In this document: positions 16,276-62,043 of the stretch, in pieces
Numbering within the stretch: position 1 is the first letter of the stretch
Layout: each line of letters begins with the position of its first letter
Origin: Ophelia neglecta
Lineage: Eukaryota
Assembly: GCA_965285935.1 (NCBI GenBank)
Contig: OZ260666.1
Span: 22,320,001-22,384,000, forward strand
Length of the DNA: 64,000 nt
Reading direction: 5' to 3'
Program-made: the position numbers and the translations under genes
Notes under the pieces: model-generated
Seen by the model: the letters and a program-made list of their open reading frames with translations, nothing else
What the model was told of the DNA's origin: nothing
Database searches by the model: none

Positions 16276-19200
16276 TCAACCGTTTTTCTCATCAGAGCCT
16301 TGCTCCGTGAGGTATTCTACGATTTTTATACGTTTATTTTGCGACGCCACGTCCAGTGGAGTACGGCCTTGTTTATCTCTGATCTTCAGGTCTGCGCCTT
16401 TGCCAAATAGATATTTCACGACCTCTAGATGCCCCTCCTGAGCCGCACTGTGTAAAGCTGGGAAGCCATCACTCCCTGGTAGGTTGATGTCAGAGCCCTG
16501 CTTGATGAGGTATTCTACTACATTGATGTGTCCATTGTAAGAAGCAGTACCAAGTGGTGTTCGACCATGTTTATCTCTGATCTTCAGGTCGGCGCCTTCA
16601 CCAAGTAGATATTTCACGACCTCTAGATGACCTCTCAGAGCTGCACTGTGTAAAGCTGGTACGCCATCACTCCCTGGTAGGTTGATGTCAGAGCCCTGCT
16701 TGATGAGGTATTCTACTACATTGATGTGTCCATTGTAAGAAGCATTACCAAGTGGTGTATTGCCGTCAATACCTATGATCTTCAGGTCCGCGCCTTCACC
16801 AAGTAGATATTTCACGACCTCTAGATGACCTCCCAGAGCTGCACTGTGTAAAGCTGGATTGCCATCACTCCCTGGTCGGTTAATGTCCGAGCCCTGCTTG
16901 ATGAGGTATCCTACCACCTTGATGTGTCCACTGAAAGAAGCACTACCAAGTGGTGTTCGACCGAGTTTATTTATGATCTTCAGGTCCGCGCCTTTACCAA
17001 GTAGATATTTCATGACCTCTAGATGCCCCTCCTGAGCTGCACTGTGTAAAGCTGGATTGCCATCACTCCCTGGTCGGTTGATGTCCGAGCCCTGCTTGAT
17101 GAGGTATTCTACTACCTTCATGTGTCCATTGTAAGAAGCATTACCAAGTGGTGTATAGCCGTCAATATCTATGATCTTCAGGTCCGCGCCTTCACCAAGT
17201 AGATATTTCACGACCTCTAGATGCCCCTTCTGAGCCGCACTGTGTAACGCTGGATTGCCATCACTCCCTGGACGGTTGATGTCCGAGCCCTGCTTGATGA
17301 GGTATTCTACCACCTTGATGTGTCCATTGTAAGAAGCATTACCAAGTGGTGTATAGCCGTCAATATCTATGATCTTCAGGTCCGCGCCTTCACCAAGTAG
17401 ATATTTCACGACCTCTAGATGCCCCTTCTGAGCCGCACTGTGTAACGCTGGATTGCCATCACTCCCTGGACGGTTGATGTCCGAGCCCTGCTTGATGAGG
17501 TATTCTACCACCTTGATGTGTCCATTGTTAGAAGCATTACCAAGTGGTGTATAGCCGTCAATATCTATGATCTTCAGGTCCGCGCCTTCACCAAGTAGAT
17601 ATTTCACGACCTCTAGATGACCTCCCAGAGCTGCACTGTGTAAAGCTGGATTGCCATCACTCCCTGGTCGGTTGATGTCCGAGCCCTGCTTGATGAGGTA
17701 TCCTACCACCTTGATGTGTCCACTGAAAGAAGCACTACCAAGTGGTGTTCGACCGAGTTTATTTATGATCTTCAGGTCCGCGCCTTTACCAAGTAGATAT
17801 TTCATGACCTCTAGATGCCCCTCCTGAGCTGCACTGTGTAAAGCTGGATTGCCATCACTCCCTGGTCGGTTGATGTCCGAGCCCTGCTTGATGAGGTATT
17901 CTACTACCTTCATGTGTCCATTGTAAGAAGCATTACCAAGTGGTGTATAGCCGTCAATATCTATGATCTTCAGGTCCGCGCCTTCACCAAGTAGATATTT
18001 CACGACCTCTAGATGCCCCTCCTGAGCTGCACTGTGTAACGCTGGATTGCCATCACTCCCTGGTCGGTTGATGTCCGAGCCCTGATTGATGAGGTATTCT
18101 ACCACCTTCATGTGTCCATTGTTAGAAGCATTACCAAGTGGTGTATAGCCGTCAATATCTATGATCTTCAGGTCGGCGCCTTCTCCAAGTAGGTATTTCA
18201 CGACCTCTAGATGACCTCTCAGAGCTGCACCGTGTAAAGCAGGATCGCCATCACTCCCTGGTCGGTTGATGTCCGAGCCCTGCTTGATGAGGTATCCTAC
18301 CACCTTGATGTGTCCACTGAAAGAAGCATTACCAAGTGGTGTTCGACCGAGTTTATTTATGATCTTCAGGTCCGCGCCTTTACCAAGTAGATATTTCATG
18401 ACCTCTAGATGCCCCTCCTGAGCTGCACTGTGTAAAGCTGGGTAGCCATCACTCCCAGGTCGGTTGATGTCCGAGCCCTGCTTGATGAGGTATTCTACTA
18501 CCTTCATGTGTCCATTGTAAGAAGCATTACCAAGTGGTGTATAGCCGTCAATATCTATGATCTTCAGGTCCGCGCCTTCACCAAGTAGATATTTCACGAC
18601 CTCTAGATGCCCCTTCTGAGCCGCACTGTGTAACGCTGGATTGCCATCACTCCCTGGACGGTTGATGTCCGAGCCCTGCTTGATGAGGTATTCTACTACC
18701 TTCATGTGTCCATTGTTAGAAGCATTACCAAGTGGTGTATAGCCGTCAATATCAATGATCTTCAGGTCCGCGCCTTCACCAAGTAGATATTTAACGACCT
18801 CTAGATGCCCATTGTATGCCGCACTCTGTAAAGCTGGATTGCCATCACTCCCTGGTCGGTTAATGTCCGAGCCCTGCTTGATGAGGTATTCTACCACCTT
18901 GATGTGTCCATTGTAAGAAGCAGTACCAAGTGGTGTATAACCATGTTTATCTATGATCTTCAGGTCGGCGCCTTTACCAAGTAGATATTTCACGACCTCT
19001 AGATGACCTCTCAGAGCTGCACTGTGTAAAGCTGGTACGCCATCACTCCCTGGTCGGTTGATGTCAGAGCCCTGCTCGATGAGGTATTCTACTACCTTGA
19101 TGTGACTATTGTAAGAAGCACTACCAAGTGGTGTTCGACCGAGTTTATTTATGATCTTCAGGTCCGCGCCTTTACCAAGTAGATATTTCACGACCTCTAG

Positions 19201-19668
19201 ATGCCCCTCCTGAGCTGCACTGTGTAAAGCTGGATAGCCATCTCTCCCTGGTCGGTTGATGTCAGAGCCCTGCTTGATGAGGTATTCTACCACCTTGATA
19301 TGTCCATTGTAAGAAGCAGTACCAAGTGGTGTATGCCCGTCAATATCTATGATATTCAGGTCGGCGCCTTTGCCAAGTAGATATGTCACGACCGGTAGAT
19401 GACCTCTCAGAGCTGCACTGTGTAAAGCTGGTACGCCATCACTCCCTGGTCGGTTGATGTCCGAGCCCTGCTCGATGAGGTATTCTACCACCTTGATATG
19501 TCCATTGGAAGAAGCACTACCTAATGGTGTATGGCCATCATTTACCAAAATATTTAAATCTGTTCCTTTTCCTAGTAGATTTTTCACGACCTCTAGATTT
19601 CCTTCCTGAGCTGCACTGTGTAAAGTATGTGGCTTGTGGTCGTCGTGGTGTTCCGCCATTACGTCTTC
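16276..19668 (-). CDS. Ankyrin-repeat protein, terminal exon with 34 ANK repeats (17 x 66-aa double units)
   Basis: Acceptor ttttctccccag|GAA at 19669/19668 (phase 0). Alternating ALHSAAxxGHLEVVKYLL and PLGxASxxGHIKVVEYLI repeats; TGA at 16276; AATAAA on the minus strand at ~15975. Confidence 0.93.
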   Translation of the reverse strand, partial: EDVMAEHHDDHKPHTLHSAAQEGNLEVVKNLLGKGTDLNILVNDGHTPLGSASSNGHIKVVEYLIEQGSDINRPGSDGVPALHSAALRGHLPVVTYLLGKGADLNIIDIDGHTPLGTASYNGHIKVVEYLIKQGSDINRPGRDGYPALHSAAQEGHLEVVKYLLGKGADLKIINKLGRTPLGSASYNSHIKVVEYLIEQGSDINRPGSDGVPALHSAALRGHLEVVKYLLGKGADLKIIDKHGYTPLGTASYNGHIKVVEYLIKQGSDINRPGSDGNPALQSAAYNGHLEVVKYLLGEGADLKIIDIDGYTPLGNASNNGHMKVVEYLIKQGSDINRPGSDGNPALHSAAQKGHLEVVKYLLGEGADLKIIDIDGYTPLGNASYNGHMKVVEYLIKQGSDINRPGSDGYPALHSAAQEGHLEVMKYLLGKGADLKIINKLGRTPLGNASFSGHIKVVGYLIKQGSDINRPGSDGDPALHGAALRGHLEVVKYLLGEGADLKIIDIDGYTPLGNASNNGHMKVVEYLINQGSDINRPGSDGNPALHSAAQEGHLEVVKYLLGEGADLKIIDIDGYTPLGNASYNGHMKVVEYLIKQGSDINRPGSDGNPALHSAAQEGHLEVMKYLLGKGADLKIINKLGRTPLGSASFSGHIKVVGYLIKQGSDINRPGSDGNPALHSAALGGHLEVVKYLLGEGADLKIIDIDGYTPLGNASNNGHIKVVEYLIKQGSDINRPGSDGNPALHSAAQKGHLEVVKYLLGEGADLKIIDIDGYTPLGNASYNGHIKVVEYLIKQGSDINRPGSDGNPALHSAAQKGHLEVVKYLLGEGADLKIIDIDGYTPLGNASYNGHMKVVEYLIKQGSDINRPGSDGNPALHSAAQEGHLEVMKYLLGKGADLKIINKLGRTPLGSASFSGHIKVVGYLIKQGSDINRPGSDGNPALHSAALGGHLEVVKYLLGEGADLKIIGIDGNTPLGNASYNGHINVVEYLIKQGSDINLPGSDGVPALHSAALRGHLEVVKYLLGEGADLKIRDKHGRTPLGTASYNGHINVVEYLIKQGSDINLPGSDGFPALHSAAQEGHLEVVKYLFGKGADLKIRDKQGRTPLDVASQNKRIKIVEYLTEQGSDEKNG
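16290..19640 (-). repeat. 198-bp coding tandem array with a ~594-bp higher-order block
   Basis: Near-identical 198-bp units. A diagnostic triplet (NNG / YNGHMK / VMK-INKLGRT-FSG) recurs three times. Confidence 0.92.
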
Positions 19669-19749
19669 CTGGGGAGAAAACAATAAACCTGAGTTGTATA
19701 CATTACAATAAAGTAGAACCACAAACCATAAACAGAAAACAACGTTTAC

Positions 19750-19845
19750 AGACATCTTCATTAAGTGTTCTCTGTCTAAGAGAAGCCATCTCATATTGGA
19801 CAATACGTCGTCCTGGAAACAAGCAGTAGAACCACAATAAGTCAT
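19750..19845 (-). CDS. Ankyrin gene internal exon (alternative acceptors at 19845 or 19812)
   Basis: Acceptors cttgcag|ATG or gtttccag|GAC, both phase 0. Donor TCT|GTAAAC is weak. The 81-bp intron that follows has no stop codon. Confidence 0.55.
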
Positions 19846-20799
19846 CTGCAAGTGAAAGATACATAGGGATAATGGGTGACATATTGCCATCATGTTTATT
19901 AACTTGTCTTATAAAGGACATGTGTCGATATTTTGTTGGTATCGGCCTAACTTCGACCTGATGTGGTCCTGACTAGCGGGATCAACCGGTCTCACAAAAC
20001 CGGTCTCTTTCAGTGCCGAATCGAAATATCACGCATTTAGTTGACTTCTTTAGATAACACCACTGGTATTTTCTCACCGCTGTTCTAGTTAGCTGTGACT
20101 TCTCATGTCTTATTTTTGAGGGTTATTGAGGCAGGGACTGAGCTTTGACATACATTTACATGATACACTACGTGGTTTTTAAGTGAAGCTAGCCCCTATT
20201 ATCTACCTAGAAATATGCCTATATGTAATGGTCTCATTCGGCTATTACTACGGCTTAAATATCTCAAAGGAAAGGGCTTGACATTTTTATATTGGCCATA
20301 ATAAGCAAACCACTGTGTTGCCTGGTAATAATGTGCCATGTATATTTTTGTTTCTTTCACGGCAGCGTCATGCGTATCAATGTCAGGCTTCGATTTATAT
20401 TATATCCATATATATATGTCTAGTTTTAGTAGTACGTGACGATACCTCAGAAATTGACTTGAATTAAAGATAAGTTATCTTAATATTGATATAAATGTAA
20501 GGCACTTTAAATTTTGGCTATTGATTAAACGCGGACGTGCGGAAGCTCTGTGACGCGGACGTCAAGGGTATTTCAGAGTGAGAGGGAGCAAAAAAGCGCC
20601 AGCAAGGCTAGGGTTATAGCAGAGGGTTAATTTTTAAATGTACCAAAAAGCCTATCTTTTCACGTATTGTCTGTTTTCATTCCATTTGGCAAACAATTTG
20701 ACATTTGCCTCAATATTACACGCAAGCCAATCACATTTGTTATGTCTCAGACTAACTATAACGAGGACGTCATCATCCATGCTATTATAATTGATACAT

Positions 20800-24979: not shown

Positions 24980-27900
24980 AGGATATCAGCTATACTGAGA
25001 GGCCTGATTTGGGTGTTTCTAATAATTATGTGGAAAGCTGTTTTGCTGAAATTGAGAATAATGGCAGGTCTGATACAGTTATTGGTATTGTTTATCGTCC
25101 CCCCGGGACAGATCCGGACTTATTTAATGATCTTATTAATGACGTGGTCAGTAAAATTAAAGCTGAACATAAACACTGTATAATTTTTGGAGACTTTAAC
25201 CTAAATCTCCTGAATTACGATACCCACAGGGGAACCCAGGAATTTGTTAATAATATGTTCTCTAATTCTATGTTGCCAGCTATTGTCAAACCCACTCGAG
25301 TTACCAAACAAAGTGCTACCCTCATTGACAATATATTCCTGGATGTTGTTGGACTTGATAATTCCTTACAGGGAGTTTTCCATTGTGATATATCTGATCA
25401 CTTCCCAGTTTTTTTTATTGATTATTCATTAACCGTCAAGCAAAACCCCCAAAGACCTGTGCAGAGAAGGAAATTCGGTCCTAAGAATATAGAAAAGTTT
25501 GGTAAATGTTTATCAGTACCGGGTCTGTGGTCAAACATTTATTCTGCCAATAGTACTCAGCAGGCCTACACCAGATTTCACGAGTGCATGACAACCACAT
25601 TTGATCAATGTTTCCCTTTTTCCACATCAAACGGATCAGTGTATCGTAACAGAAAGCCCTGGTTGACGGAGGGATTGAAAAAGTCGATTACTACAAAAAT
25701 TAGACTTTATATAATTAGTAAGAAATATCCTTCCACTACAAATATTAAGCAATACAAACTCTTTAATAATAAATTAGTGTCTTTATTGCGACTCCAAGAA
25801 AAAAACTATTACCATACACGACTTCAGAACTCTAGTAATAATTTAAAATGTTCATGGCAAATTATCAAAGAAGTTATCAACAAAAGAAAACCCAATAAAA
25901 AACAAGACTTTTTTTTAATTAATAATAAAAAGGTTACTGATCCTAGAACCATCGCTGATGGATTTAATGACTTTTTCGTAAATGTGGGCCCATCATTGGC
26001 AGCATCCTTTCCTTCGACCAATGATATTTCACTAGATTATTCAAATGTAAATAGTATTTTCATTGAACAAACATCAGTAAAAGAAATAGGTCAGATTTTA
26101 AATTCCCTTAGGGATAGCAGCGCTGGATGGGATGGTTTTACTGCTAAAGTGATGAAACAAGTAATCTCTTCATATGTTCAGCCGCTGACTTATATTATTA
26201 ATATATCACTACAAGAGGGTATTGTACCAGATGAATTAAAAATTGCTCGTGTTGTACCTATATTTAAGGGTGCTGATCCATCTCTGTGCACAAATTATAG
26301 ACCTGTATCAGTGCTACCCATCTTCTCAAAGGTTTTTGAGAGAATAATGTGTAGCAGGCTACTCTCTTTTATTAATGATAATAATTTACTATATGGTAAA
26401 CAATTTGGATTTAGAGAAGGTCATTCCACTAATATGGCTTTAATCCTCCTAACTGATCACATCTCGCGAGCCATTGAGGGTGGTGACTGTGTCTTAGGCC
26501 TGTTTCTAGATTTCTCTAAGGCCTTTGACACAGTCAACCACAATATCCTGATGGATAAATTATGCAAATATGGCATAAGAGGACAAGCCCATAAATGGCT
26601 TAAAAATTATCTTTCTAATCGATCTCAATTTGTGGATTATGATGGTGCTTTCTCGCAGTCCAAACTTATACAATGTGGTGTCCCACAAGGTTCTGTATTG
26701 GGCCCAATTCTTTTCATTCTATACATAAATGATCTTGCAAAAGTATCACAAATTATAGAAATTATACTCTTTGCCGATGATTCCAATGCTTTCATCACAG
26801 GGAAAAATGCAAATGACCTAATTACAAAGGTCAATGCAGAAATCCCTAAGATAACTAAATGGCTTGAAATAAATAAGCTTACGCTGAATATTAAAAAGAC
26901 ACATTTTATGATATTTAAGAGTAGTCGAAAAAAATTTCTATGTATTAATGGATTATTAATTAAAGGACAACCAATTGACCAAGTCGAGTCGACAAAGTTT
27001 CTAGGGGTCATGCTTGACTCAACTCTCTCTTGGAGTCAACACACTCAATATATTAAAGGCAAGGTAGCCAAAGGTATTGGTATTATTACTAAAGCCAGAA
27101 AATTTCTTTACACCTCTACACTCCGAACTTTATATTTTTCTTTCGTGTACCCATATTTTATATATTGCAACGAGGTATGGGGTAATGCCTGTAAGAAATA
27201 CCTTGACCCTCTTACTAAACTACAAAAGAGAGCAATAAGATTGGTGGCTGGATGTTCTAGAAAGGAGCATACAGAACCCTTGTTCTCTGATCTACAAATT
27301 TTGACGATAGGTAAAATTCACATCCAATGCAACCAAATTATAATTTACAAATACTTGCATGGTAAATTGCCTCACCCTTTGTTATGTTTATTTAAGTTGA
27401 ATGCCGAAACGCATGGATATGGTACTAGGCAATCCGGCAACATTCATCTCCCTCAAGTTAAAACTGAACTTACACTTAAATCGTTTGTATATAACAGTGC
27501 GGCTAGCTATAACCAAATCTCAAAGGTCTTGGATTACAATGTCGGTCTTCCAACCTTTAAACGTCATCTGAGGAAATATGTGCTCAGTGTTTAAAAAATA
27601 ATTCTCTTTGTGTATAATTACTTTTTTATTTTTTTATTTTTTTTTTTTCAGAGTAAATTCATATACTTGTCATTTTTTATTTTGCGTGTAATGTTATACA
27701 CAGGCTTGATGTTCGTGACTGTTTATGGAATATCTTAGATGCAGAGAGTATTGTGCTGCTGTTACTGCAGTATTTAAACTTATCTATTTGCATAGTGGAT
27801 TTACAGGCTGGGTGCGGCGTGGGCATGCCCAGCGATTGCAACCGGGTTGCGGTTGCTGGGCCTGTCCATGCCGTATTTATTTATTCATATTTATGTTTTT

Positions 27901-31614: not shown

Positions 31615-32510
31615 GTTTAAACATATTTATTTACACCGTGATTTTTTACAATAGCAAAAGCTAATCGGGGTAAGTATCACGAGATAACGAATAAGAAATA
31701 AATATTTACAAGTTGTCACATGCGTAAGGAATATAGAGACGTATGGTGTGTGAAATGGGATGGATGGATGGATAGATGGATGGATGGATGGGTAGATGGA
31801 TGATTTGGTGCCTGCGGGGTCTACATAGATGCAAACATGTTTAGCGAATGTGACTAAGTGACAAAACGCCCAGTACTAATAATATAAGAACTAATTAAGT
31901 TGCAAAACTCTTGGGCTCTATCAGCAACGGGTCCGTAAAGGATAGTTTGGACCCAATCATTGCTGTGAATATTGTGTCTATTAAAAAATTCCATGATTGG
32001 AAGTCTGGAATTAGAATATTTTTCGCAGAATAGAAAGAAATGAGAGACACTCTCAGAGCTGGTGCCACACGGACAGGTAGGAGAGGGAATACAATGGTTA
32101 AGATAAAGATTGTGATTGAGACAGCTACAGCCAAGACGACATTGGGATAGAAAGATTTGAGTAAGTCTGCAGCCCATGAAATACCAGGCAGGAGTTTCAT
32201 GCAGGGGCCAGGAGATACGAGTTCTGAAAATGTTTTTGCTCCGACTGGTTCTAATCGATAATGCCAATTTATTCCATTCCGAAATTGCTAAAAGAAAAAA
32301 AAAATTCTGATAATGTTGTGTGCGAAAACGAGGCATGGGCACCCTCAAATTGGAAACACTACGGGTAAAGAGAGTTACCTGAGGCAGGGTAAGTAGGAAA
32401 TTACTAAGGTACTAAGGAGTGGAGCCATTATAAATATCATAGAATTTACAAAGAACAGATCGATGCGGTCGAGAAGCAAGACTTACCCAACCCACTTCAT
32501 TTAACAGAAT
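31615..32510 (-). mobile_element. 3' fragment of a CR1/L2-group LINE, flanked by ~165-bp direct repeats
   Basis: ORF 31854-32348 has EWNKL, RLGCSCLN and CPCG..E...HFFLFC, typical of an ORF2 C-terminus. (GGAT)n at ~31757-31802. Flanking repeats 31448-31614 and 32511-32676. Confidence 0.85.
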
Positions 32511-36843: not shown

Positions 36844-38221
36844 ATGGCAAACTCGGAATGTTTTGAATTATTTGAGTTGGGTGCAGAAGAGGGCAGCCAT
36901 CCCGATTCGACTAATCATGCCAAGCCATGTGGGAAAACATCGGAAAACATAGGTAGGTCACAGATAACTTCAATCATTGCTAAAGATGTCCCGCAAAGCC
37001 CCGAAGTCGACAATGAATCCTCGTCGAGTTCCTCGGACACCCACAGCTTAACGACTGATGAGTGGGCGGCAATTTGTAACGAGCCTGAATATGAAATAAC
37101 TGCCATACGGTCAGATTATCTTCACCCTCCCAATTTTCCTCTTTCTGAGATAGCCTTGGTAACTGCCCCTGATACCGAAAGCCATATATCTAACGAGGTA
37201 CAAACACCTGTCCATAATAATAGTCAAGATCACAATGCACCTTCCGCTCAGACAGCAGGCGACACTGTCAGTTCTGAACAACAAACTGATGGGAATGTCG
37301 TCACAGGCGCGTCCGAAATGGAAAATACGACGAGCTTCTCTAGAAAAGACTATTTAACCTTTAAAACTGTCCGAAGAAGCCAGATGATATTGGTTATTGA
37401 TACAGATAACACATCGCATGCGTCAACTGGAACCCCCGTGCCACATTCGTCCGATAATGACCAAGAAATTGAATGTTCACAGCCTGTTAACGATGCATTT
37501 CGTCAACAACAAAATCTGCAAAAATTAGAATCAGTTACACTATCTGGTACGCTTGATCAAGATGAAGACCGTAAGAAGAATCGTGCACGTTCCTGCACAG
37601 ACGAACGAACACCGAACGCTCAATCAGATGCGAAAGTACATGTTGATCCCCTTGAAAGTAATCTTGACCAACCTACACCACGACCCTTGATTAATCCAAC
37701 AGAGCTAGTTAGAAGTACAGAAGAGCGCCTTGAAGTGAACGTAAATAGCGACAACTTACCGGCAAGGTCATTACCACTAAGGCCTAGATATGACCCTGAT
37801 GAGTCCATTGACCCTCCGCAACCATGCCGACGATATACAAAGGAACACGACTATTCAACAATAAGTGATTACGGTATTAACAGCGACAATGCCGATCTGG
37901 CTGAAGCAGAGAATGTACCAATTGAAGTACCCGAAATATTAACGACAGAAAATCCCCCGACAACAAACCAGTATGAAAAGCTGGATTTTACTAGAAGAGA
38001 TGGATGCAGAGTAAATTGTAAGGCTTTGCCATACATTATTACGTCGTTAATAACAGCCGTGATCGTTGGACTTCTATGGACTGCTCAGCAATACGACTGG
38101 TTCAGGGGTGAGTTAACCATGAATCTAGGTCAGAAAGAAGGAGGCTTAATTTCCACTGATACTTTGCTGATGTATTCCGAACCAGTGACTCGAGAACCTT
38201 CAATTCCAACGGCAGCTCCAG
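36844..38221 (+). CDS. Type II membrane Ig-domain receptor, exon 1 (disordered N-terminal tail, TM helix, stalk)
   Basis: 459-codon open exon, no N-terminal signal peptide. Hydrophobic ALPYIITSLITAVIVGLLW at ~38023-38080 follows basic residues. Donor G|GTAGGA is phase 1. Confidence 0.75.
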
Positions 38222-38735
38222 GTAGGACAACCCATCTATCTTAATTAAATCAATGAAAGTATAAACATATACATTTCTATATCAGTGTGAGCTCAGGAAC
38301 AACATGATGATAATACTTATATGCTTTAACATTATGGCCATAGGGAAGAGGGCGAAAATCAATAGTATATCCGGTATTAAGGAAAAACTAGCCTTATGGC
38401 ACTGATGTTATGTTCAGACACGGTTTAGTCACTGTGGCAGAAATACGATATTGTTTCACAAGTATAATTTTGTTCTTTAACTGTAAATTGCCCCTAATAT
38501 GTCTATATTTGAGAACAAAATTTAAATATTTTTGGGTGCATTGACCAGTAGAAGGAGTAACACAAGCTGGTAAAGGAATTTATATTAATCCGTGTAGTAT
38601 CAGTGGCATATATTTGGTTATGTAGTGGTACTGGGAAGGAAAATTATAGGGTTAAATATACATACATCGCTAGAAAATAAATCAAATGCTGGCCTCTTTT
38701 AAAGGTCTCTAAAATATGGTATGGTGTCATTCTTC

Positions 38736-39058
38736 CCAAAGCGTGGCCGAGTGGTTAGGGTGTCCGCCTCGCAAGTGGGAGATCGGGGTTCGCTTCTCGA
38801 TCGCGTCAAACCTAAGACGTAAAAATAGGTACTGATAGCTCCCCTGCCAGGCACCCGGTATTTCGGGGTAGTATCAGGACAGGTCAACCCAGTGTCAGTA
38901 TAATGTGACTAGGTGGGGTTCCCTGTCTGGTGTCTACGGCAGGTACTCCAGTGAGGCAGCACTCTAAAGAGGGCATTGAGCCCACTGTCACAAGTAGACA
39001 CAGTGGCGATATGACCGCTTAGTGTTGAAAGCCACGTAAAACCCCAAACAACAACAAC
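38736..39058 (+). mobile_element. Full-length tRNA-derived Meta-domain SINE in intron 1 of the Ig gene
   Basis: A box TGGCCGAGTGG, B-box-like GGTTCG, central gtcaaacctaagac...ggtact...cctgccaggca domain, gttgaaagccacgtaaaacc 3' end and (AAC)n tail. Confidence 0.87.
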
Positions 39059-39588
39059 CCTAGCGCAGTTGGTTCTGTGCTAAAAGGTCAGCGATTTGAT
39101 GCCAGTGTAAGCGATTGATATGTTCGAATTTACTGGCATCAGACTGTTACCGATTTCCTTTAAACCCGAACTTCGGGAGCCTTGTTAGATCCGTGTGTTA
39201 CAACGTGACGCTCATTTATCATGAATGAGGAACCCCTAGCAGGTCTTTGACATAGTCTAGTAAAGGCGAGCCCAACTATGCATCTAAGTTGTTGGTTGCC
39301 TCGTGAAAAGGTCCCGTCGATAAATGCACTATAGTGAGGGAGAAAGGTTGTTCATAGATGTATAATAAGTTATGCTTATCTCTCAGTAAAAAGCATGTGG
39401 TTTGAAAGTAACTATTAGCAACCGACATCGGCGACAAAATAGCAGTTGCTGAAGCAGCTTTAATGATCATCTGATCAATTTATTGGAAAATATCGAATGT
39501 GGATTAATTATCATCCCTTTATACGATGAATGATTAATTATGCTTTTATAGTATCTGATGTTTGCTGTATTGATCTTTTGTTGTTCAG

Positions 39589-39906
39589 CAGAAGTCGTAT
39601 TTAGTGCCTCTTACATTGGTGGAAACGCCACACTGCGTTGGAGTAGCCTGGGCATAGCTAGGTATCCACCTATGGCGTGCGTGAACAATTATGATTCGGT
39701 CTTGTTTCTGTTTCTTAACTTTTCGGCAAGTAAAATAAACCAAGGGGACTCCGAAATTGACAATCAAAGAGCTTTAAAATTGTTCACTGACAAAGAAGCC
39801 CAAACATTTGGATTCACACTTATCAATGTCACCATGAGGGATGCCGGGATATATAAGTGTAAAGTGACAGGACAAATAAAACGGAGTGGTACTATATTTA
39901 TCTGGG
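39589..39906 (+). CDS. Ig receptor exon 2: V-set-like Ig domain
   Basis: NAGNAG acceptor ttcag|cag and donor G|GTAGT-type G|GTAAGT, phase 1-1; GGNATLRW and FTLINVTMRDAGIYKC motifs. Confidence 0.85.
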
Positions 39907-40444
39907 GTAAGTGATGTGACATATATGTGTATCTTATTATGTATATATACATATTCAATAGTAGATGTGGTGTCTGCCTTGTTGGTTTCTCTGAAATAAG
40001 TCTCAAAATACGACTGTGACACTGATTATAAAATGGCAAAGGTTATGATAAGCATTTCATAGCTGGAATCCATTATATAAACAATTCGCAGATGACGACA
40101 CATAACTCGGTGAAATTTAGAGTCTATTTTTATGATGATTTTTCACATGGCTTTCCCTCCATGCAATAAAAAGATATTGGAATTAGCGCGGGATCAATGG
40201 CTTCATTTACGAATTATTAATCTAGCAAGTTGTCTGATTTATCTATGATTACAGGCTTAGTTTAAATACTGCGGTATGCCTATTCAATCTCTATAGTCTC
40301 TTGTCTGAATTTATCGAAAAATTAATGTTTGATTTCTTTATCATATACCTTACCTCAATCATACATTAAGTTTTTATATGACGAATTACTCCTGAAATAA
40401 ACTGCAGCTGATTGTAAATTACCAGCTTTTTCTTCGTTATACAG

Positions 40445-40714
40445 GCAAACCACTTAAAGCTCGTATAACGCAGGAAGGCAGTATGTTGAGATGTGACGTT
40501 CAATCTACTTCTCTACCAGTAAGGGCCCGACCCCCAATGTTGTATACATGGTTCCGGAATGGTTCTTTTCATGTCAATGAGACAAATGATTCCTACCTAC
40601 CACCACCAGTAGAAAATTGGCGGATAGGCATTTCGCTTTATTCCTGCTATGGGAGAGAAGAAGGCTCTTCCTTTGTTTCGGACCAAAGTCGGAATGTTTC
40701 CATTACCGAAAGAG
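40445..40714 (+). CDS. Ig receptor exon 3: C2/I-like Ig domain
   Basis: Acceptor gttatacag|; MLRCDV...YTWFRNG...YSCYGRE; donor G|GTAGAT; phase 1-1. Confidence 0.85.
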
Positions 40715-41762
40715 GTAGATATTTCCTCATACTGTGTACTATATATCTCGTTCATGCTCCTTGTAAGGCAAAACACATATTGTTGGTATCCAGCGTTGAA
40801 CGTCCGAGCTCAGGAAAACCGGCAAGTAATTCTTCAATTGGACGTCATATTGAAAGTTTTAAGTTTTCCAATTTATATGTTTGTGCGCGTTATATTGTGG
40901 ATAGATTTCCAGTAAAGCTGAACTTACAGCTTGTTTATATCACATATGGTCATGTTTTTTTTTAGATGGTCAACGAATGCCACCGTCGAATTTTTTTCAT
41001 AGCACAGGTGAGCTTAAAATAATTTGCCCTGTGTCCAGATGTTTACCCTAATTTTTCTTGACAACCTGAATGATCGATATGGTTCATTTGATGTTTTAGG
41101 TTGCTGTTATACAAACCGATCATTTGGTTTACTTTACAGCACGAAATGATTTTATTAGACGAAATCTAAATTTTCTTTAGTGTGAGGACTGCTACGAACG
41201 AGCCGTAGCGAGGCGATGACTGACCCTTAAACAGCTTGTTTGTCGTAAGATTTCAACTGATAGGTGAAATCGAAGCCACGATTTGCAGGCCGCAAAACCT
41301 ATCCATCAGAATAGCTCTAACATTTGTTTCAGGAAATGAAAGAACCTTAGGCTCAGCAGCTAAAAATGATAAATCCTATTAATTTTCGGCCGTGAGTCGG
41401 GACAAAGCGCAAGAGATGAATACTGTAAAGCTTAAAAGTGGGGTATAGAAATGTAGAGCAAACTTCAGCTTTAACGTAATGAATCTGTGATGCCTGAGAT
41501 CTGGGGGACAACTTGCGGTATTCCCCTGGGCACGGATATTCAATGCATCACTGCAAGTAGGGTATATTAGAAAGGCCTTGTCTTTAAATAAATTAATTTT
41601 GCATATACATATGTATTGTCAAAGAAGTATTGCGTTTATTTAGGAGAAGAATGTTAAGGGAAAGTACTACAATTCAATGCCATTTGATGATTGATTATAC
41701 ATTATCCATACTAAACAAATAAGGAATACTCGCTGTTAACTGCCATTTTTCTTTAACTTTAG

Positions 41763-41782
41763 GCTCTTTCAACATGAACTAG
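41763..41782 (+). CDS. Ig receptor candidate terminal coding exon (GSFNMN*)
   Basis: Strong acceptor ttttctttaactttag|, phase 1. An alternative acceptor at 41333 gives GNERTLGSAAKNDKSY*. AATAAA at ~43246. Confidence 0.45.
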
Positions 41783-61908: not shown

Positions 61909-62043
61909 NNNNNNNNNNNNNNNNNNNNNNNNNNNNNNNNNNNNNNNNNNNNNNNNNNNNNNNNNNNNNNNNNNNNNNNNNNNNNNNNNNNNNNNNNNNN
62001 NNNNNNNNNNNNNNNNNNNNNNNNNNNNNNNNNNNNNNNNNNN
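61909..62043. other. Assembly gap (135 N)
   Basis: Run of n. Confidence 1.

What the first reader, a model, noticed from the sequence alone, without database searches (positions are those of the whole stretch)
36844..41782. Inverted-topology (type II) immunoglobulin-superfamily receptor
Seen: ~395-aa disordered N-terminus with no signal peptide, a single TM with basic residues on its N-side, a short stalk, then two phase-1/1 Ig exons rich in N-glycosylation sequons (NAT, NFS, NVT, NGS, NET, NDS, NVS) and a stop soon after. Established: IgSF receptors are almost always type I, GPI-anchored or secreted; type II topology is typical of C-type lectin receptors. Inference: Ig exons shuffled onto a lectin-receptor-like signalling chassis, possibly an undescribed invertebrate receptor class.
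Basis: partly seen in the sequence, partly recalled or inferred. Interest (0 to 1): 0.8.

Follow-up and report, generated by a model that had tools for sequence, protein, structure and literature searches.

The report
Inverted-topology Ig receptor gene family member
This locus is one intact member of a family of at least 77 genes, almost absent from public protein databases, that appear to encode cell-surface immunoglobulin-domain proteins anchored the opposite way round from nearly all known ones, but no RNA data exist yet to confirm the splicing or the 3' end.

Summary
There is a 459-codon first exon with no N-terminal hydrophobic segment and one transmembrane helix with basic residues on its N side. 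A stalk follows, then two phase 1-1 Ig exons, one V-type and one C2-type, both enriched in N-glycosylation sequons.

It is not a lone oddity. 76 of 77 exon-1 homologues in this genome have an Ig exon of the same type downstream on the same strand (median 2.8 kb). All 19 intact paralogues examined keep a phase-1 donor at the same glycine just after the helix. No conserved start codon or leader exon precedes the Ig exons. In the window's lineage one intron was almost wholly deleted with the frame kept.

Several paralogues stop at or just after their last Ig exon, so a second helix is unlikely. A type II reading is therefore well supported (about 0.7).

The "lectin-receptor chassis" is an analogy, not homology.

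No RNA runs were available. An exhaustive profile search of 1.84 billion proteins found three fragments, at least one from another species. The scan had already noted this family on other DNA of the same genome (s1-730855, s1-730835).

The parts
36844..38221 (+). Exon 1: start codon, about 393-aa low-complexity cytoplasmic region, transmembrane helix and stalk. It ends in phase 1 at CCAG|GTAGGA.
   Evidence: ORF and donor; start Met invariant in 15 paralogues; about 77 homologous loci in the genome; dN/dS 0.39-0.58 against close paralogues.
37018..37074 (+). Conserved Ser-rich acidic motif ending in TTDEWAAI (aa 59-77). It has an invariant W followed by I/V/L at +3.
   Evidence: Alignment A1, (S60, S63, S64, S68, T70, T71, D72, W74, A76 invariant). 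Its function is inferred only.
37342..37398 (+). Conserved motif R-x-D-Y-L-x-F-x-x-V-P-x-x-x-M-I (aa 167-185).
   Evidence: R167, Y170, F173, V176, M181 invariant. Together with the previous motif it is repeated three to four times in the 768-aa paralogue L030.
37843..37878 (+). Conserved tyrosine motif E-H-x-Y-S-x-I-S-D-Y (aa 334-345).
   Evidence: Y337, I340, D342 invariant.
37966..37983 (+). Conserved tyrosine motif N-x-Y-E-x-L (aa 375-380), 14 residues before the helix.
   Evidence: N375, Y377, E378, L380 invariant. It is also present in P0001 from the other sample.
38023..38085 (+). Single transmembrane helix (aa 394-414), the predicted uncleaved signal anchor.
   Evidence: Kyte-Doolittle 19-mer score 2.04, next best 0.34. 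K+R is 5 on the N flank and 1 on the C flank. The same pattern holds in all 15 paralogues.
38108..38128 (+). 21-nt in-frame remnant of an ancestral intron. It begins with the old donor GTGAGT and ends with AG.
   Evidence: In paralogues L023-L026 the same donor GGG|GTGAGTTAACCATG opens a 1.1-1.5 kb intron. The window, L021 and L022 keep only these 21 nt.
38129..38221 (+). Stalk. It was ancestrally a separate 93-nt phase 1-1 mini-exon and is now fused to exon 1.
   Evidence: it is a separate exon in L023-L026 with acceptor ...ttcaag|GT and donor CCA|ggtagg, at 74-77% aa identity.
38735..39057 (+). Very high-copy 323-bp interspersed repeat inside intron 1. It is absent from one contig form in each of the DNA runs.
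   Evidence: joint 38734->39058 in all three runs; word depth 2.6e5 to 1.1e6. ARAGORN calls no tRNA in it.
39589..39906 (+). Ig exon 1, V-type, phase 1-1. Sequons are NAT, NFS and NVT.
   Evidence: Invariant residues are C30, C90, W17, NVT and the D-A-G-x-Y-x-C motif.
40445..40714 (+). Ig exon 2, C2-type, phase 1-1, ending G|GTAGAT. Sequons are NGS, NET, NDS and NVS.
   Evidence: Invariant residues are C16, W35 and C67. The phase-1 donor is conserved in the paralogue groups that have one.
41763..41782 (+). Unverified.
   Evidence: The AG acceptor plus 20 nt are identical in 6 of 7 close paralogues. The surrounding intron is equally conserved, and eight invariant runs of 20 nt or more lie in about 1.5 kb.
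40966..41051 (+). Alternative candidate terminal exon (28 codons, then TAA). Weak.
   Evidence: Phase-compatible, but the AG acceptor exists only in the window and its near-identical twin L021, and frames differ in L022 and L025.

Best explanation
The locus encodes a single-pass type II (N-in, C-out) membrane glycoprotein of the immunoglobulin superfamily. It belongs to a lineage-restricted family of at least 77 genes.

How it most likely works:
- Translation starts at 36844. About 390 residues of low-complexity tail stay in the cytosol.
- The only hydrophobic segment (aa 394-414) acts as an uncleaved signal anchor, with its basic N flank kept inside.
- The rest is translocated: a roughly 37-aa stalk, a V-type Ig domain and a C2-type Ig domain. 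Each folds around a conserved cysteine pair and is N-glycosylated.
- The C-terminus is free, or a short tail follows.

Inferred, not shown:
- The ectodomain binds a ligand on other cells or microbes.
- Signalling runs through the tail's invariant short motifs. These are two tyrosine motifs, Y-S-x-I and N-x-Y-E-x-L about 40 residues apart, that would recruit SH2-type partners after phosphorylation. There is also an acidic Ser/Thr-W-x-x-I motif and a D-Y-L-x-F..V-P..M-I motif of unknown partner.
For: One gene, not two:
- All 20 fetched paralogous loci have exon 1, then Ig exon 1, then Ig exon 2 on one strand.
- Genome-wide, 76 of 77 exon-1 loci have a same-strand Ig exon within 12 kb downstream, and none has one on the opposite strand.
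- All 19 intact exon-1 ORFs end with a phase-1 GT donor at the homologous Gly, 5-10 residues after the helix. This holds despite only 23-31% aa identity.
- Every Ig exon 1 has a phase-1 acceptor.
- A phase 1-1 stalk mini-exon lies between them in L023-L026. In the window it is fused in frame to exon 1 by an intron deletion.
- dN/dS is 0.2-0.6 for the tail, Ig exon 1 and Ig exon 2 alike.

Orientation:
- There is no N-terminal hydrophobic segment and only one helix.
- K+R is 2-5 on the N flank against 0-2 on the C flank in 15 paralogues.
- Sequons are at the expected rate in the tail (0.86 per 100 aa against 0.99 expected). They are 2.9-fold and 2.2-fold enriched in the Ig exons.
- The NVT sequon is invariant and NAT nearly so.
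- The cysteine pairs are invariant.

No second helix:
- No coding sequence is conserved 3' of the Ig exons between subfamilies.
- L036 and L038 carry an in-frame stop at the end of Ig exon 2. L037 stops one codon after it.
- Group B (L027-L029) stops four codons after its third domain.
- All of these have intact upstream exons.

Ig fold.

Presence elsewhere: a fragment from another sample (P0002) has no match in this genome at E 1e-8, yet shows the same helix and a G|GTATGT phase-1 donor.
Against: - There is no transcript evidence at all. The three runs found are genomic DNA: contigs cross exon-intron borders and depth is even.
- The 3' terminal exon of the window's gene is unknown. Ig exon 2 ends in a phase-1 donor, GTAGAT, which is weak.
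- No dedicated topology predictor (DeepTMHMM, SignalP) was available, and the spliced model was not searched or folded as one chain.
- In a type II layout the V-type domain is membrane-proximal and the C2-type domain distal. This is the reverse of typical type I receptors.
- Pfam scores for both Ig exons are below the gathering cut-offs.
- Function and signalling are inference from motifs only.
Confidence: 0.7

Rival explanations
1. Two neighbouring genes that are co-duplicated. Exon 1 alone would make a tail-anchored-like cytosolic protein that ends a few codons after the helix. The Ig exons would belong to a separate secreted Ig protein with its own start or leader exon.
For: - Unspliced exon-1 ORFs do terminate 3-22 codons after the conserved Gly.
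- In the window an in-frame ATG at 39558 precedes the Ig exon and reads as a short hydrophobic peptide.
- There is no RNA to show the junction.
Against: - 12 of 21 loci have no in-frame ATG between the preceding stop and the Ig acceptor. The hydrophobic reading is simply the translated polypyrimidine tract.
- A permissive scan finds no leader-exon candidate in 9 of 19 introns, and none is shared between subfamilies.
- The phase-1 GTRAGT-type donor at the same Gly in all 19 intact loci would be unexplained.
- The phase 1-1 stalk mini-exon has no start codon and can only be coding if joined to exon 1. In the window it is fused to exon 1 in frame.
Confidence: 0.1
2. A hairpin protein. Further 3' exons would add a second helix, so both ends are cytosolic and the Ig domains form an extracellular loop.
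For: - Ig exon 2 of the window, and the last Ig exons of many paralogues, end in phase-1 donors. At least one more exon is therefore expected.
- Short hydrophobic exons are hard to detect by similarity.
Against: - tblastx finds no conserved coding block downstream between subfamilies. This includes 23 kb downstream in the window.
- The only conserved island found has stops in all frames.
- Three to four independent lineages with intact upstream exons stop at or within four codons of their last Ig exon.
Confidence: 0.1
3. A decaying or unexpressed gene copy. The family would be real, but this copy or the whole subgroup would be a pseudogene.
For: - There is no expression data.
- Some relatives are broken: L034 has a disrupted exon 1, and several hits carry stops.
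- The donor of Ig exon 2 is weak.
Against: - All three coding exons of the window are open.
- dN/dS is 0.2-0.5 against its 92% and 80% paralogues.
- The frame was preserved across the intron deletion.
Confidence: 0.06
4. Opposite orientation: N-terminal region outside and Ig domains in the cytosol, as in titin-like intracellular Ig domains.
For: - Cytosolic Ig domains exist in muscle proteins (my own knowledge).
- A few proteins translocate long N-termini without a signal peptide, for example neuregulin-1 (my own knowledge).
Against: - The charge bias is positive on the N side in all 15 paralogues.
- Sequons are enriched only in the Ig exons.
- The cysteine pairs and the NVT sequon are invariant.
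Confidence: 0.03

Closest known systems
Type I IgSF immune-type and adhesion receptors (for example CRTAM, nectin-like proteins, CD4, KIR/LILR)
   Same: - V-type and C2-type Ig domains, one per phase 1-1 exon.
- Conserved cysteine pair and the D-x-G-x-Y-x-C motif.
- The best structural matches are CRTAM, CD4 D1, IgLON and TREM2.
- A multigene, clustered, rapidly diversifying family.
   Different: - No signal peptide.
- The helix lies N-terminal to the Ig domains and the long tail is N-terminal.
- The V-type domain would sit next to the membrane.
- The tail has no detectable relatives.
Type II C-type lectin-like receptors (Ly49, NKG2/CD94, CLEC-2, Dectin-1, CD23)
   Same: - N-terminal cytoplasmic tail with tyrosine motifs, then a signal-anchor helix, a stalk and a C-terminal recognition domain.
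- Clustered multigene families.
   Different: - The ectodomain is Ig, not a C-type lectin domain.
- The tail is about 390 aa rather than 30-50 aa.
- The tyrosine motifs do not fit the strict ITIM or hemITAM consensus.
- There is no sequence homology.
Hydractinia Alr family of unusual IgSF genes (PMC9546547)
   Same: - An invertebrate, clustered, large family of divergent Ig-domain membrane proteins.
- Weak Pfam signal, with the fold recognised by structure prediction.
   Different: - As I recall, Alr proteins are type I with signal peptides. I did not read the paper here; only its title and abstract start came up.
- No sequence relationship was tested or seen.
Other members of the same family in this genome, noted earlier by the scan (s1-730855, s1-730835, C9 about 14.3-15.0 Mb)
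   Same: The same exon-1 motifs, helix, phase-1 donor and Ig exons. Those loci appear among my hits and as L018-L020 and L030.
   Different: - That subgroup has a 770-790-aa tail with the two N-terminal motifs repeated three to four times, and three to four Ig-like exons.
- The window's subgroup has one motif set, two Ig exons and a stalk.

Membership tests
Immunoglobulin superfamily (Ig domains) | Ig beta-sandwich fold | tested here: met
   AlphaFold2 from paralogue alignments gives pLDDT 82.7 and 82.1. Foldseek against PDB gives CRTAM, CD4 and IgLON at E 7e-6 for exon 2 of the gene. For exon 3 of the gene it gives CD2 d2, OSCAR and GPVI at E 8e-3, TM 0.55-0.67.
Immunoglobulin superfamily (Ig domains) | Conserved cysteine pair with the Y-x-C motif in strand F, and Trp in strand C | tested here: met
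   In the first Ig exon, C30 and C90 are invariant and D-A-G-x-Y-x-C is nearly invariant. The invariant Trp (W17) lies before the first Cys, which is atypical. In the second Ig exon C16, W35 and C67 are invariant and canonical.
Immunoglobulin superfamily (Ig domains) | Significant match to curated Ig sequence models | tested here: inconclusive
   The window's exons score 20-21 bits against cut-offs of 21.8-27. 13 of 17 paralogues hit PF00047 and 6 of 17 hit Ig_2 at E below 0.01. The family profile hits IgSF chains in PDB at E down to 4e-10.
Immunoglobulin superfamily (Ig domains) | One domain per phase 1-1 exon | tested here: met
   Exons of 318 and 270 nt, phase 1 at both ends. The same holds in the paralogues.
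Type II (signal-anchor) single-pass membrane proteins | No cleavable N-terminal signal peptide | tested here: met
   Hydropathy of the first 48 residues is at most 0.5 in all 15 paralogues. The start Met is invariant. SignalP was not available.
Type II (signal-anchor) single-pass membrane proteins | A single internal hydrophobic helix with more positive charge on its N side | tested here: met
   one segment scoring 1.9-3.0, next best at most 1.08. K+R is 2-5 on the N flank against 0-2 on the C flank.
Type II (signal-anchor) single-pass membrane proteins | No further membrane-spanning segment downstream | tested here: inconclusive
   The terminal exon of the window's gene is unknown. Family evidence argues against a second helix: stops occur at the end of the last Ig exon in L036, L038 and group B, and there is no conserved 3' coding block.
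Type II (signal-anchor) single-pass membrane proteins | Experimentally shown N-in/C-out orientation | not testable with these tools
   This needs tagging, glycosylation mapping or protease protection.
C-type lectin-like NK/myeloid receptors | C-type lectin-like ectodomain | tested here: not met
   The ectodomain exons are Ig. There is no lectin hit in Pfam.
C-type lectin-like NK/myeloid receptors | ITIM (I/V/L/S-x-Y-x-x-L/V/I) or hemITAM (acidic triad plus Y-x-x-L) in the N-terminal tail | tested here: not met
   The window has H-D-Y-S-T-I and N-Q-Y-E-K-L. Position -2 is H or N, and no acidic triad precedes the tyrosine. Y-x-x-I/L cores are present, so the resemblance is functional at most.

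The most novel reading that the evidence does not exclude
The family is a previously undescribed class of animal recognition receptors: type II IgSF proteins with long N-terminal tyrosine-motif tails. Members are co-duplicated head-to-head with ankyrin-repeat genes, and the two work together as a sensing and signalling pair in immunity or allorecognition. This would be an independent invention of the 'type II receptor' layout that vertebrates build with lectin domains.
Probability: 0.2. Interest if true: 0.85.

Novelty: new variant of a known kind. Interest (0 to 1): 0.66.

Why it matters
To my knowledge, Ig-domain surface receptors are almost always type I, GPI-anchored or secreted. Three full-text literature searches here turned up no described type II IgSF receptor family.

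A family of at least 77 genes with the reverse layout would show that Ig exons can be deployed on a signal-anchor chassis at scale. It would be an invertebrate parallel to the lectin-type NK and myeloid receptors.

It also offers a set of conserved, wholly uncharacterised cytoplasmic motifs to test for signalling partners.

The claim is directly testable with one RNA library and a simple topology assay.

Tried and rejected
- RNA evidence: the run search returned only three runs of one sample. When laid, they behave as genomic DNA, so there are no splice joints.
- Relatives of exon 1: word search found none. ESM Atlas gave no usable hit. Pfam found nothing for the window or five paralogue tails. 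A PRIMA1 hit at E 0.07 lies on a poly-proline run and is chance.
- Own start codon at 39558 for the Ig exons: rejected at family level.
- Leader exon hidden in the exon 1 to Ig intron: no conserved candidate.
- Conserved 3' exons: tblastx of the window's downstream 5 kb and 23 kb against distant paralogues found nothing. Among the paralogues only a third Ig-like exon turned up.
- Remnant of that third exon in the window: HMM and blastn gave nothing significant.
- My candidate exon 40966-41051: dropped, because its AG acceptor is confined to the window and its twin.
- Conservation profile to pick the terminal exon: uninformative, because introns of the close paralogues are as conserved as exons.
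- A conserved island downstream of L031 and L033: stops in all frames, so non-coding.
- ARAGORN on the intron repeat: no tRNA.
Only coordinates were compared.
- Every exon was handled separately by reference.


Full report
**What is in the sequence**

The ORF 36844-38244 opens with ATG and encodes 466 codons. Read with the donor CCAG|GTAGGA after 38221, it gives 459 full codons and ends in phase 1.

Kyte-Doolittle scanning finds one hydrophobic segment, aa 394-414 (nt 38023-38085), with a score of 2.04. The next best window scores 0.34, and none lies near the N-terminus. Five K/R lie in the 15 residues before the helix and one lies after it.

The acceptor ...ttgttcag|CA at 39588/39589 opens a 318-nt exon that ends TGGG|GTAAGT (39906). 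The acceptor ...tatacag|GC at 40444/40445 opens a 270-nt exon that ends AGAG|GTAGAT (40714). Both exons are phase 1-1.

**Are the two exons Ig domains?**

Pfam gives only sub-threshold hits: I-set, ig and V-set at E about 4e-4, and Ig_2 at 9e-4. I therefore aligned each exon with 16 paralogues (A2, A3) and folded them.

- The first exon gives pLDDT 82.7. Its best PDB matches are CRTAM, CD4 domain 1, IgLON5, nectin-like 1 and TREM2, at E from 7e-6 and TM about 0.6-0.67. It is a V-type domain.
- The second exon gives pLDDT 82.1. Its matches are weaker and C2-like: CD2 domain 2, OSCAR, GPVI and Fc receptors, at E from 8e-3.
- The A2 profile hits CEA, pIgR, titin and contactin sequences in PDB down to E 4e-10.
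- The invariant residues are the expected ones. In the first domain they are C30 and C90, D-A-G-x-Y-x-C and an invariant NVT sequon. In the second they are C16, W35 and C67.
- One oddity: the invariant Trp of the first domain lies before, not after, the first Cys.

**It is a family, and exon 1 and the Ig exons travel together**

In the window's own genome (762 Mb) exon 1 has 104 matches and the first Ig exon has 143. I merged the exon-1 matches into 77 loci. Of these, 76 have a same-strand Ig exon of this type within 12 kb downstream, at a median start-to-start distance of 2.8 kb. None has one on the opposite strand.

I fetched 20 loci that range from 100% to 23% exon-1 identity, on C1, C2, C5, C7, C8, C9 and C12. 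All show exon 1, then Ig exon 1, then Ig exon 2 in order.

**Evidence that they are spliced into one message**

No RNA was available, so the argument is comparative.

1. All 19 intact exon-1 ORFs carry a phase-1 GT donor (G|GTAAGT, G|GTGAGT and the like) at the same conserved Gly, 5-10 residues after the helix. The ORFs then run into stops at variable distances.
2. Every first Ig exon has a phase-1 acceptor behind a polypyrimidine tract.
3. The in-frame ATG at 39558 could give the Ig exon its own hydrophobic start. It is not a family feature: 12 of 21 loci have no ATG there, and the 'hydrophobic peptide' is the translated T-rich tract.
4. A permissive scan for leader exons in the intervening introns finds none in 9 of 19 loci, and none is shared between subfamilies.
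5. In the 80% paralogues L023-L026, exon 1 ends at GGG|GTGAGTTAACCATG. The stalk is then a separate 93-nt phase 1-1 mini-exon 1.1-1.5 kb downstream. In the window, its twin L021 and L022, only 21 nt of that intron remain (38108-38128, from GTGAGT to AG). The stalk is therefore fused to exon 1 with the frame kept. A start-less phase 1-1 mini-exon can only be coding if it is joined to exon 1.
6. The tail, the first Ig exon and the second Ig exon all show dN/dS of 0.2-0.6 against close paralogues.

**Orientation**

- The charge bias holds in all 15 aligned paralogues: K+R is 2-5 before the helix and 0-2 after it.
- N-glycosylation sequons occur at the compositional expectation in the tail, 0.86 against 0.99 per 100 aa.
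- They occur at 2.9 times and 2.2 times expectation in the two Ig exons.
- Together with the invariant cysteine pairs, this places the Ig part in the ER lumen or outside the cell, and the N-terminal 390 residues in the cytosol.

**The 3' end**

The second Ig exon ends in a phase-1 donor in the window and in those paralogue groups that have a donor there. However, these paralogues' introns are just as conserved, so this proves nothing. My own candidate (40966-41051) has its acceptor only in the window and its twin.

Between subfamilies nothing coding is conserved downstream, except a third Ig-like exon. That exon is present at 55 genomic places, including the seven fetched loci L027-L031, L033 and L039. 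It is absent from the window.

Several lineages with intact upstream exons end at their last Ig exon:

- L036 has TAA in place of the last codon before the old donor.
- L038 has TAA four nt before the old donor.
- L037 stops one codon after it.
- Group B stops four codons after its third domain, where relatives have T|GTAAGT.

A required C-terminal helix is therefore unlikely.

**The tail**

It has no Pfam, word-search or ESM Atlas relatives. Across paralogues of 23-31% identity, five short motifs are conserved:

- a Ser-rich acidic stretch ending T-T-D-E/D-W-A-A-I/V;
- R-x-D-Y-L/F-x-F-x-x-V-P-x-x-x-M-I;
- P-C-P-K-x-P-D, in some members only;
- E-H-x-Y-S-x-I-S-D-Y;
- N-x-Y-E-x-L, just before the basic flank of the helix.

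In the 768-aa paralogue L030 the first two motifs are repeated three to four times. The two tyrosine cores (Y-x-x-I and Y-x-x-L, about 40 residues apart) suggest phosphotyrosine signalling. This is inference. They do not fit the strict ITIM or hemITAM patterns.

**Distribution**

An exhaustive profile search (A1) of 1.84 billion representative proteins found three hits only. All are short ORFs from Logan contigs of one run, ERR14113986, and all are singletons without names.

P0002 has no match in this genome at E 1e-8, so it comes from another organism. Its contig shows the same helix followed by G|GTATGT in phase 1. The family thus exists beyond this genome but is absent from annotated protein space.

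**Context**

The gene lies head-to-head with the 1205-codon ankyrin-repeat ORF at 16276-19893 on the minus strand. The closest relatives of that ankyrin gene lie head-to-head, 13-48 kb from paralogues of this gene, at ten or more places on C9 (one search compared). This may merely reflect duplication of a two-gene block.

**Relation to earlier notes of this scan**

The scan had already noted this family on other DNA of the same genome (s1-730855, s1-730835). I re-derived the family size, gene structure and topology argument independently. What is new here:

- the stalk-exon and intron-deletion argument;
- the genome-wide pairing count;
- the leader-exon and start-codon controls;
- the natural stops at the last Ig exon;
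- the hit in a second organism.

**Limits**

- There is no transcript evidence.
- No dedicated topology predictor was available.

Noticed in passing
window 16276-19893 (-) and 36844 (+); C9 coordinates: The type II Ig gene is head-to-head with a long ankyrin-repeat gene, with 17 kb between the ORFs. The same divergent pairing, 13-48 kb apart, recurs at ten or more paralogous places on C9. Examples are 20064788/20093909, 22238076/22271465, 23461030/23474491, 17406221/17430448 and 17248261/17276144.
   Followed up: partly
window 36844-41782 versus G000:C9:23452000-23461999 (L021): A near-identical inverted copy of the whole gene lies 1.1 Mb away, with one amino-acid difference in exon 1 and identical Ig exons. 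Neighbouring paralogues and ankyrin genes are mirrored too: coordinate sums are about 45.81-45.82 Mb. This suggests a large inverted duplication or palindrome centred near C9:22.91 Mb. The inner arms are more alike than the outer ones.
   Followed up: partly
window 38735-39057: A 323-bp repeat in intron 1 has an enormous copy number (summed word depth 2.6e5 to 1.1e6). In all three DNA runs one contig form skips exactly this stretch (joint 38734->39058). It may be an insertion polymorphism. Its head looks tRNA-like by eye, but ARAGORN calls nothing.
   Followed up: partly
window 38108-38128: An intron of 1.1-1.5 kb in sister paralogues is reduced here to 21 in-frame nucleotides, apparently by deletion between two AGGT microhomologies. 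The old donor GTGAGT survives and could still splice to the Ig exon in phase. That would give a stalk-less isoform.
   Followed up: partly
L019:2014-2346 (-), L027-L031, L033, L039 (third exon); Domain number varies in the family. Some members have an extra V-like exon before the first Ig exon. 55 genomic places carry a third C-terminal domain exon with two conserved Cys and no Pfam hit. Its fold was not predicted.
   Followed up: partly
one search hits on C9:2.99-5.05 Mb, C1:16.2-16.7 Mb, C2:121.18-121.23 Mb and C8:8.63-8.67 Mb: 61 of 143 Ig exons of this type have no exon-1 homologue within 12 kb upstream, so the same V-type exon seems to serve other gene families. That would fit exon shuffling between type I and type II chassis.
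   Followed up: no
window 25009-27594 (+) and 31854-32348 (-): An 861-codon reverse-transcriptase/endonuclease ORF of a non-LTR retrotransposon, plus another element fragment, fill the space between the ankyrin gene and the Ig gene.
   Followed up: no
L031:6400-8500 and L039:8100-10000: A long tandem array with a 40-nt period lies downstream of two paralogues. It reads as repeated peptide-like ORFs in tblastx, but the period is not a multiple of three.
   Followed up: no
window 61909-62043: A run of 135 N. It is outside the finding and was left untouched.
   Followed up: no
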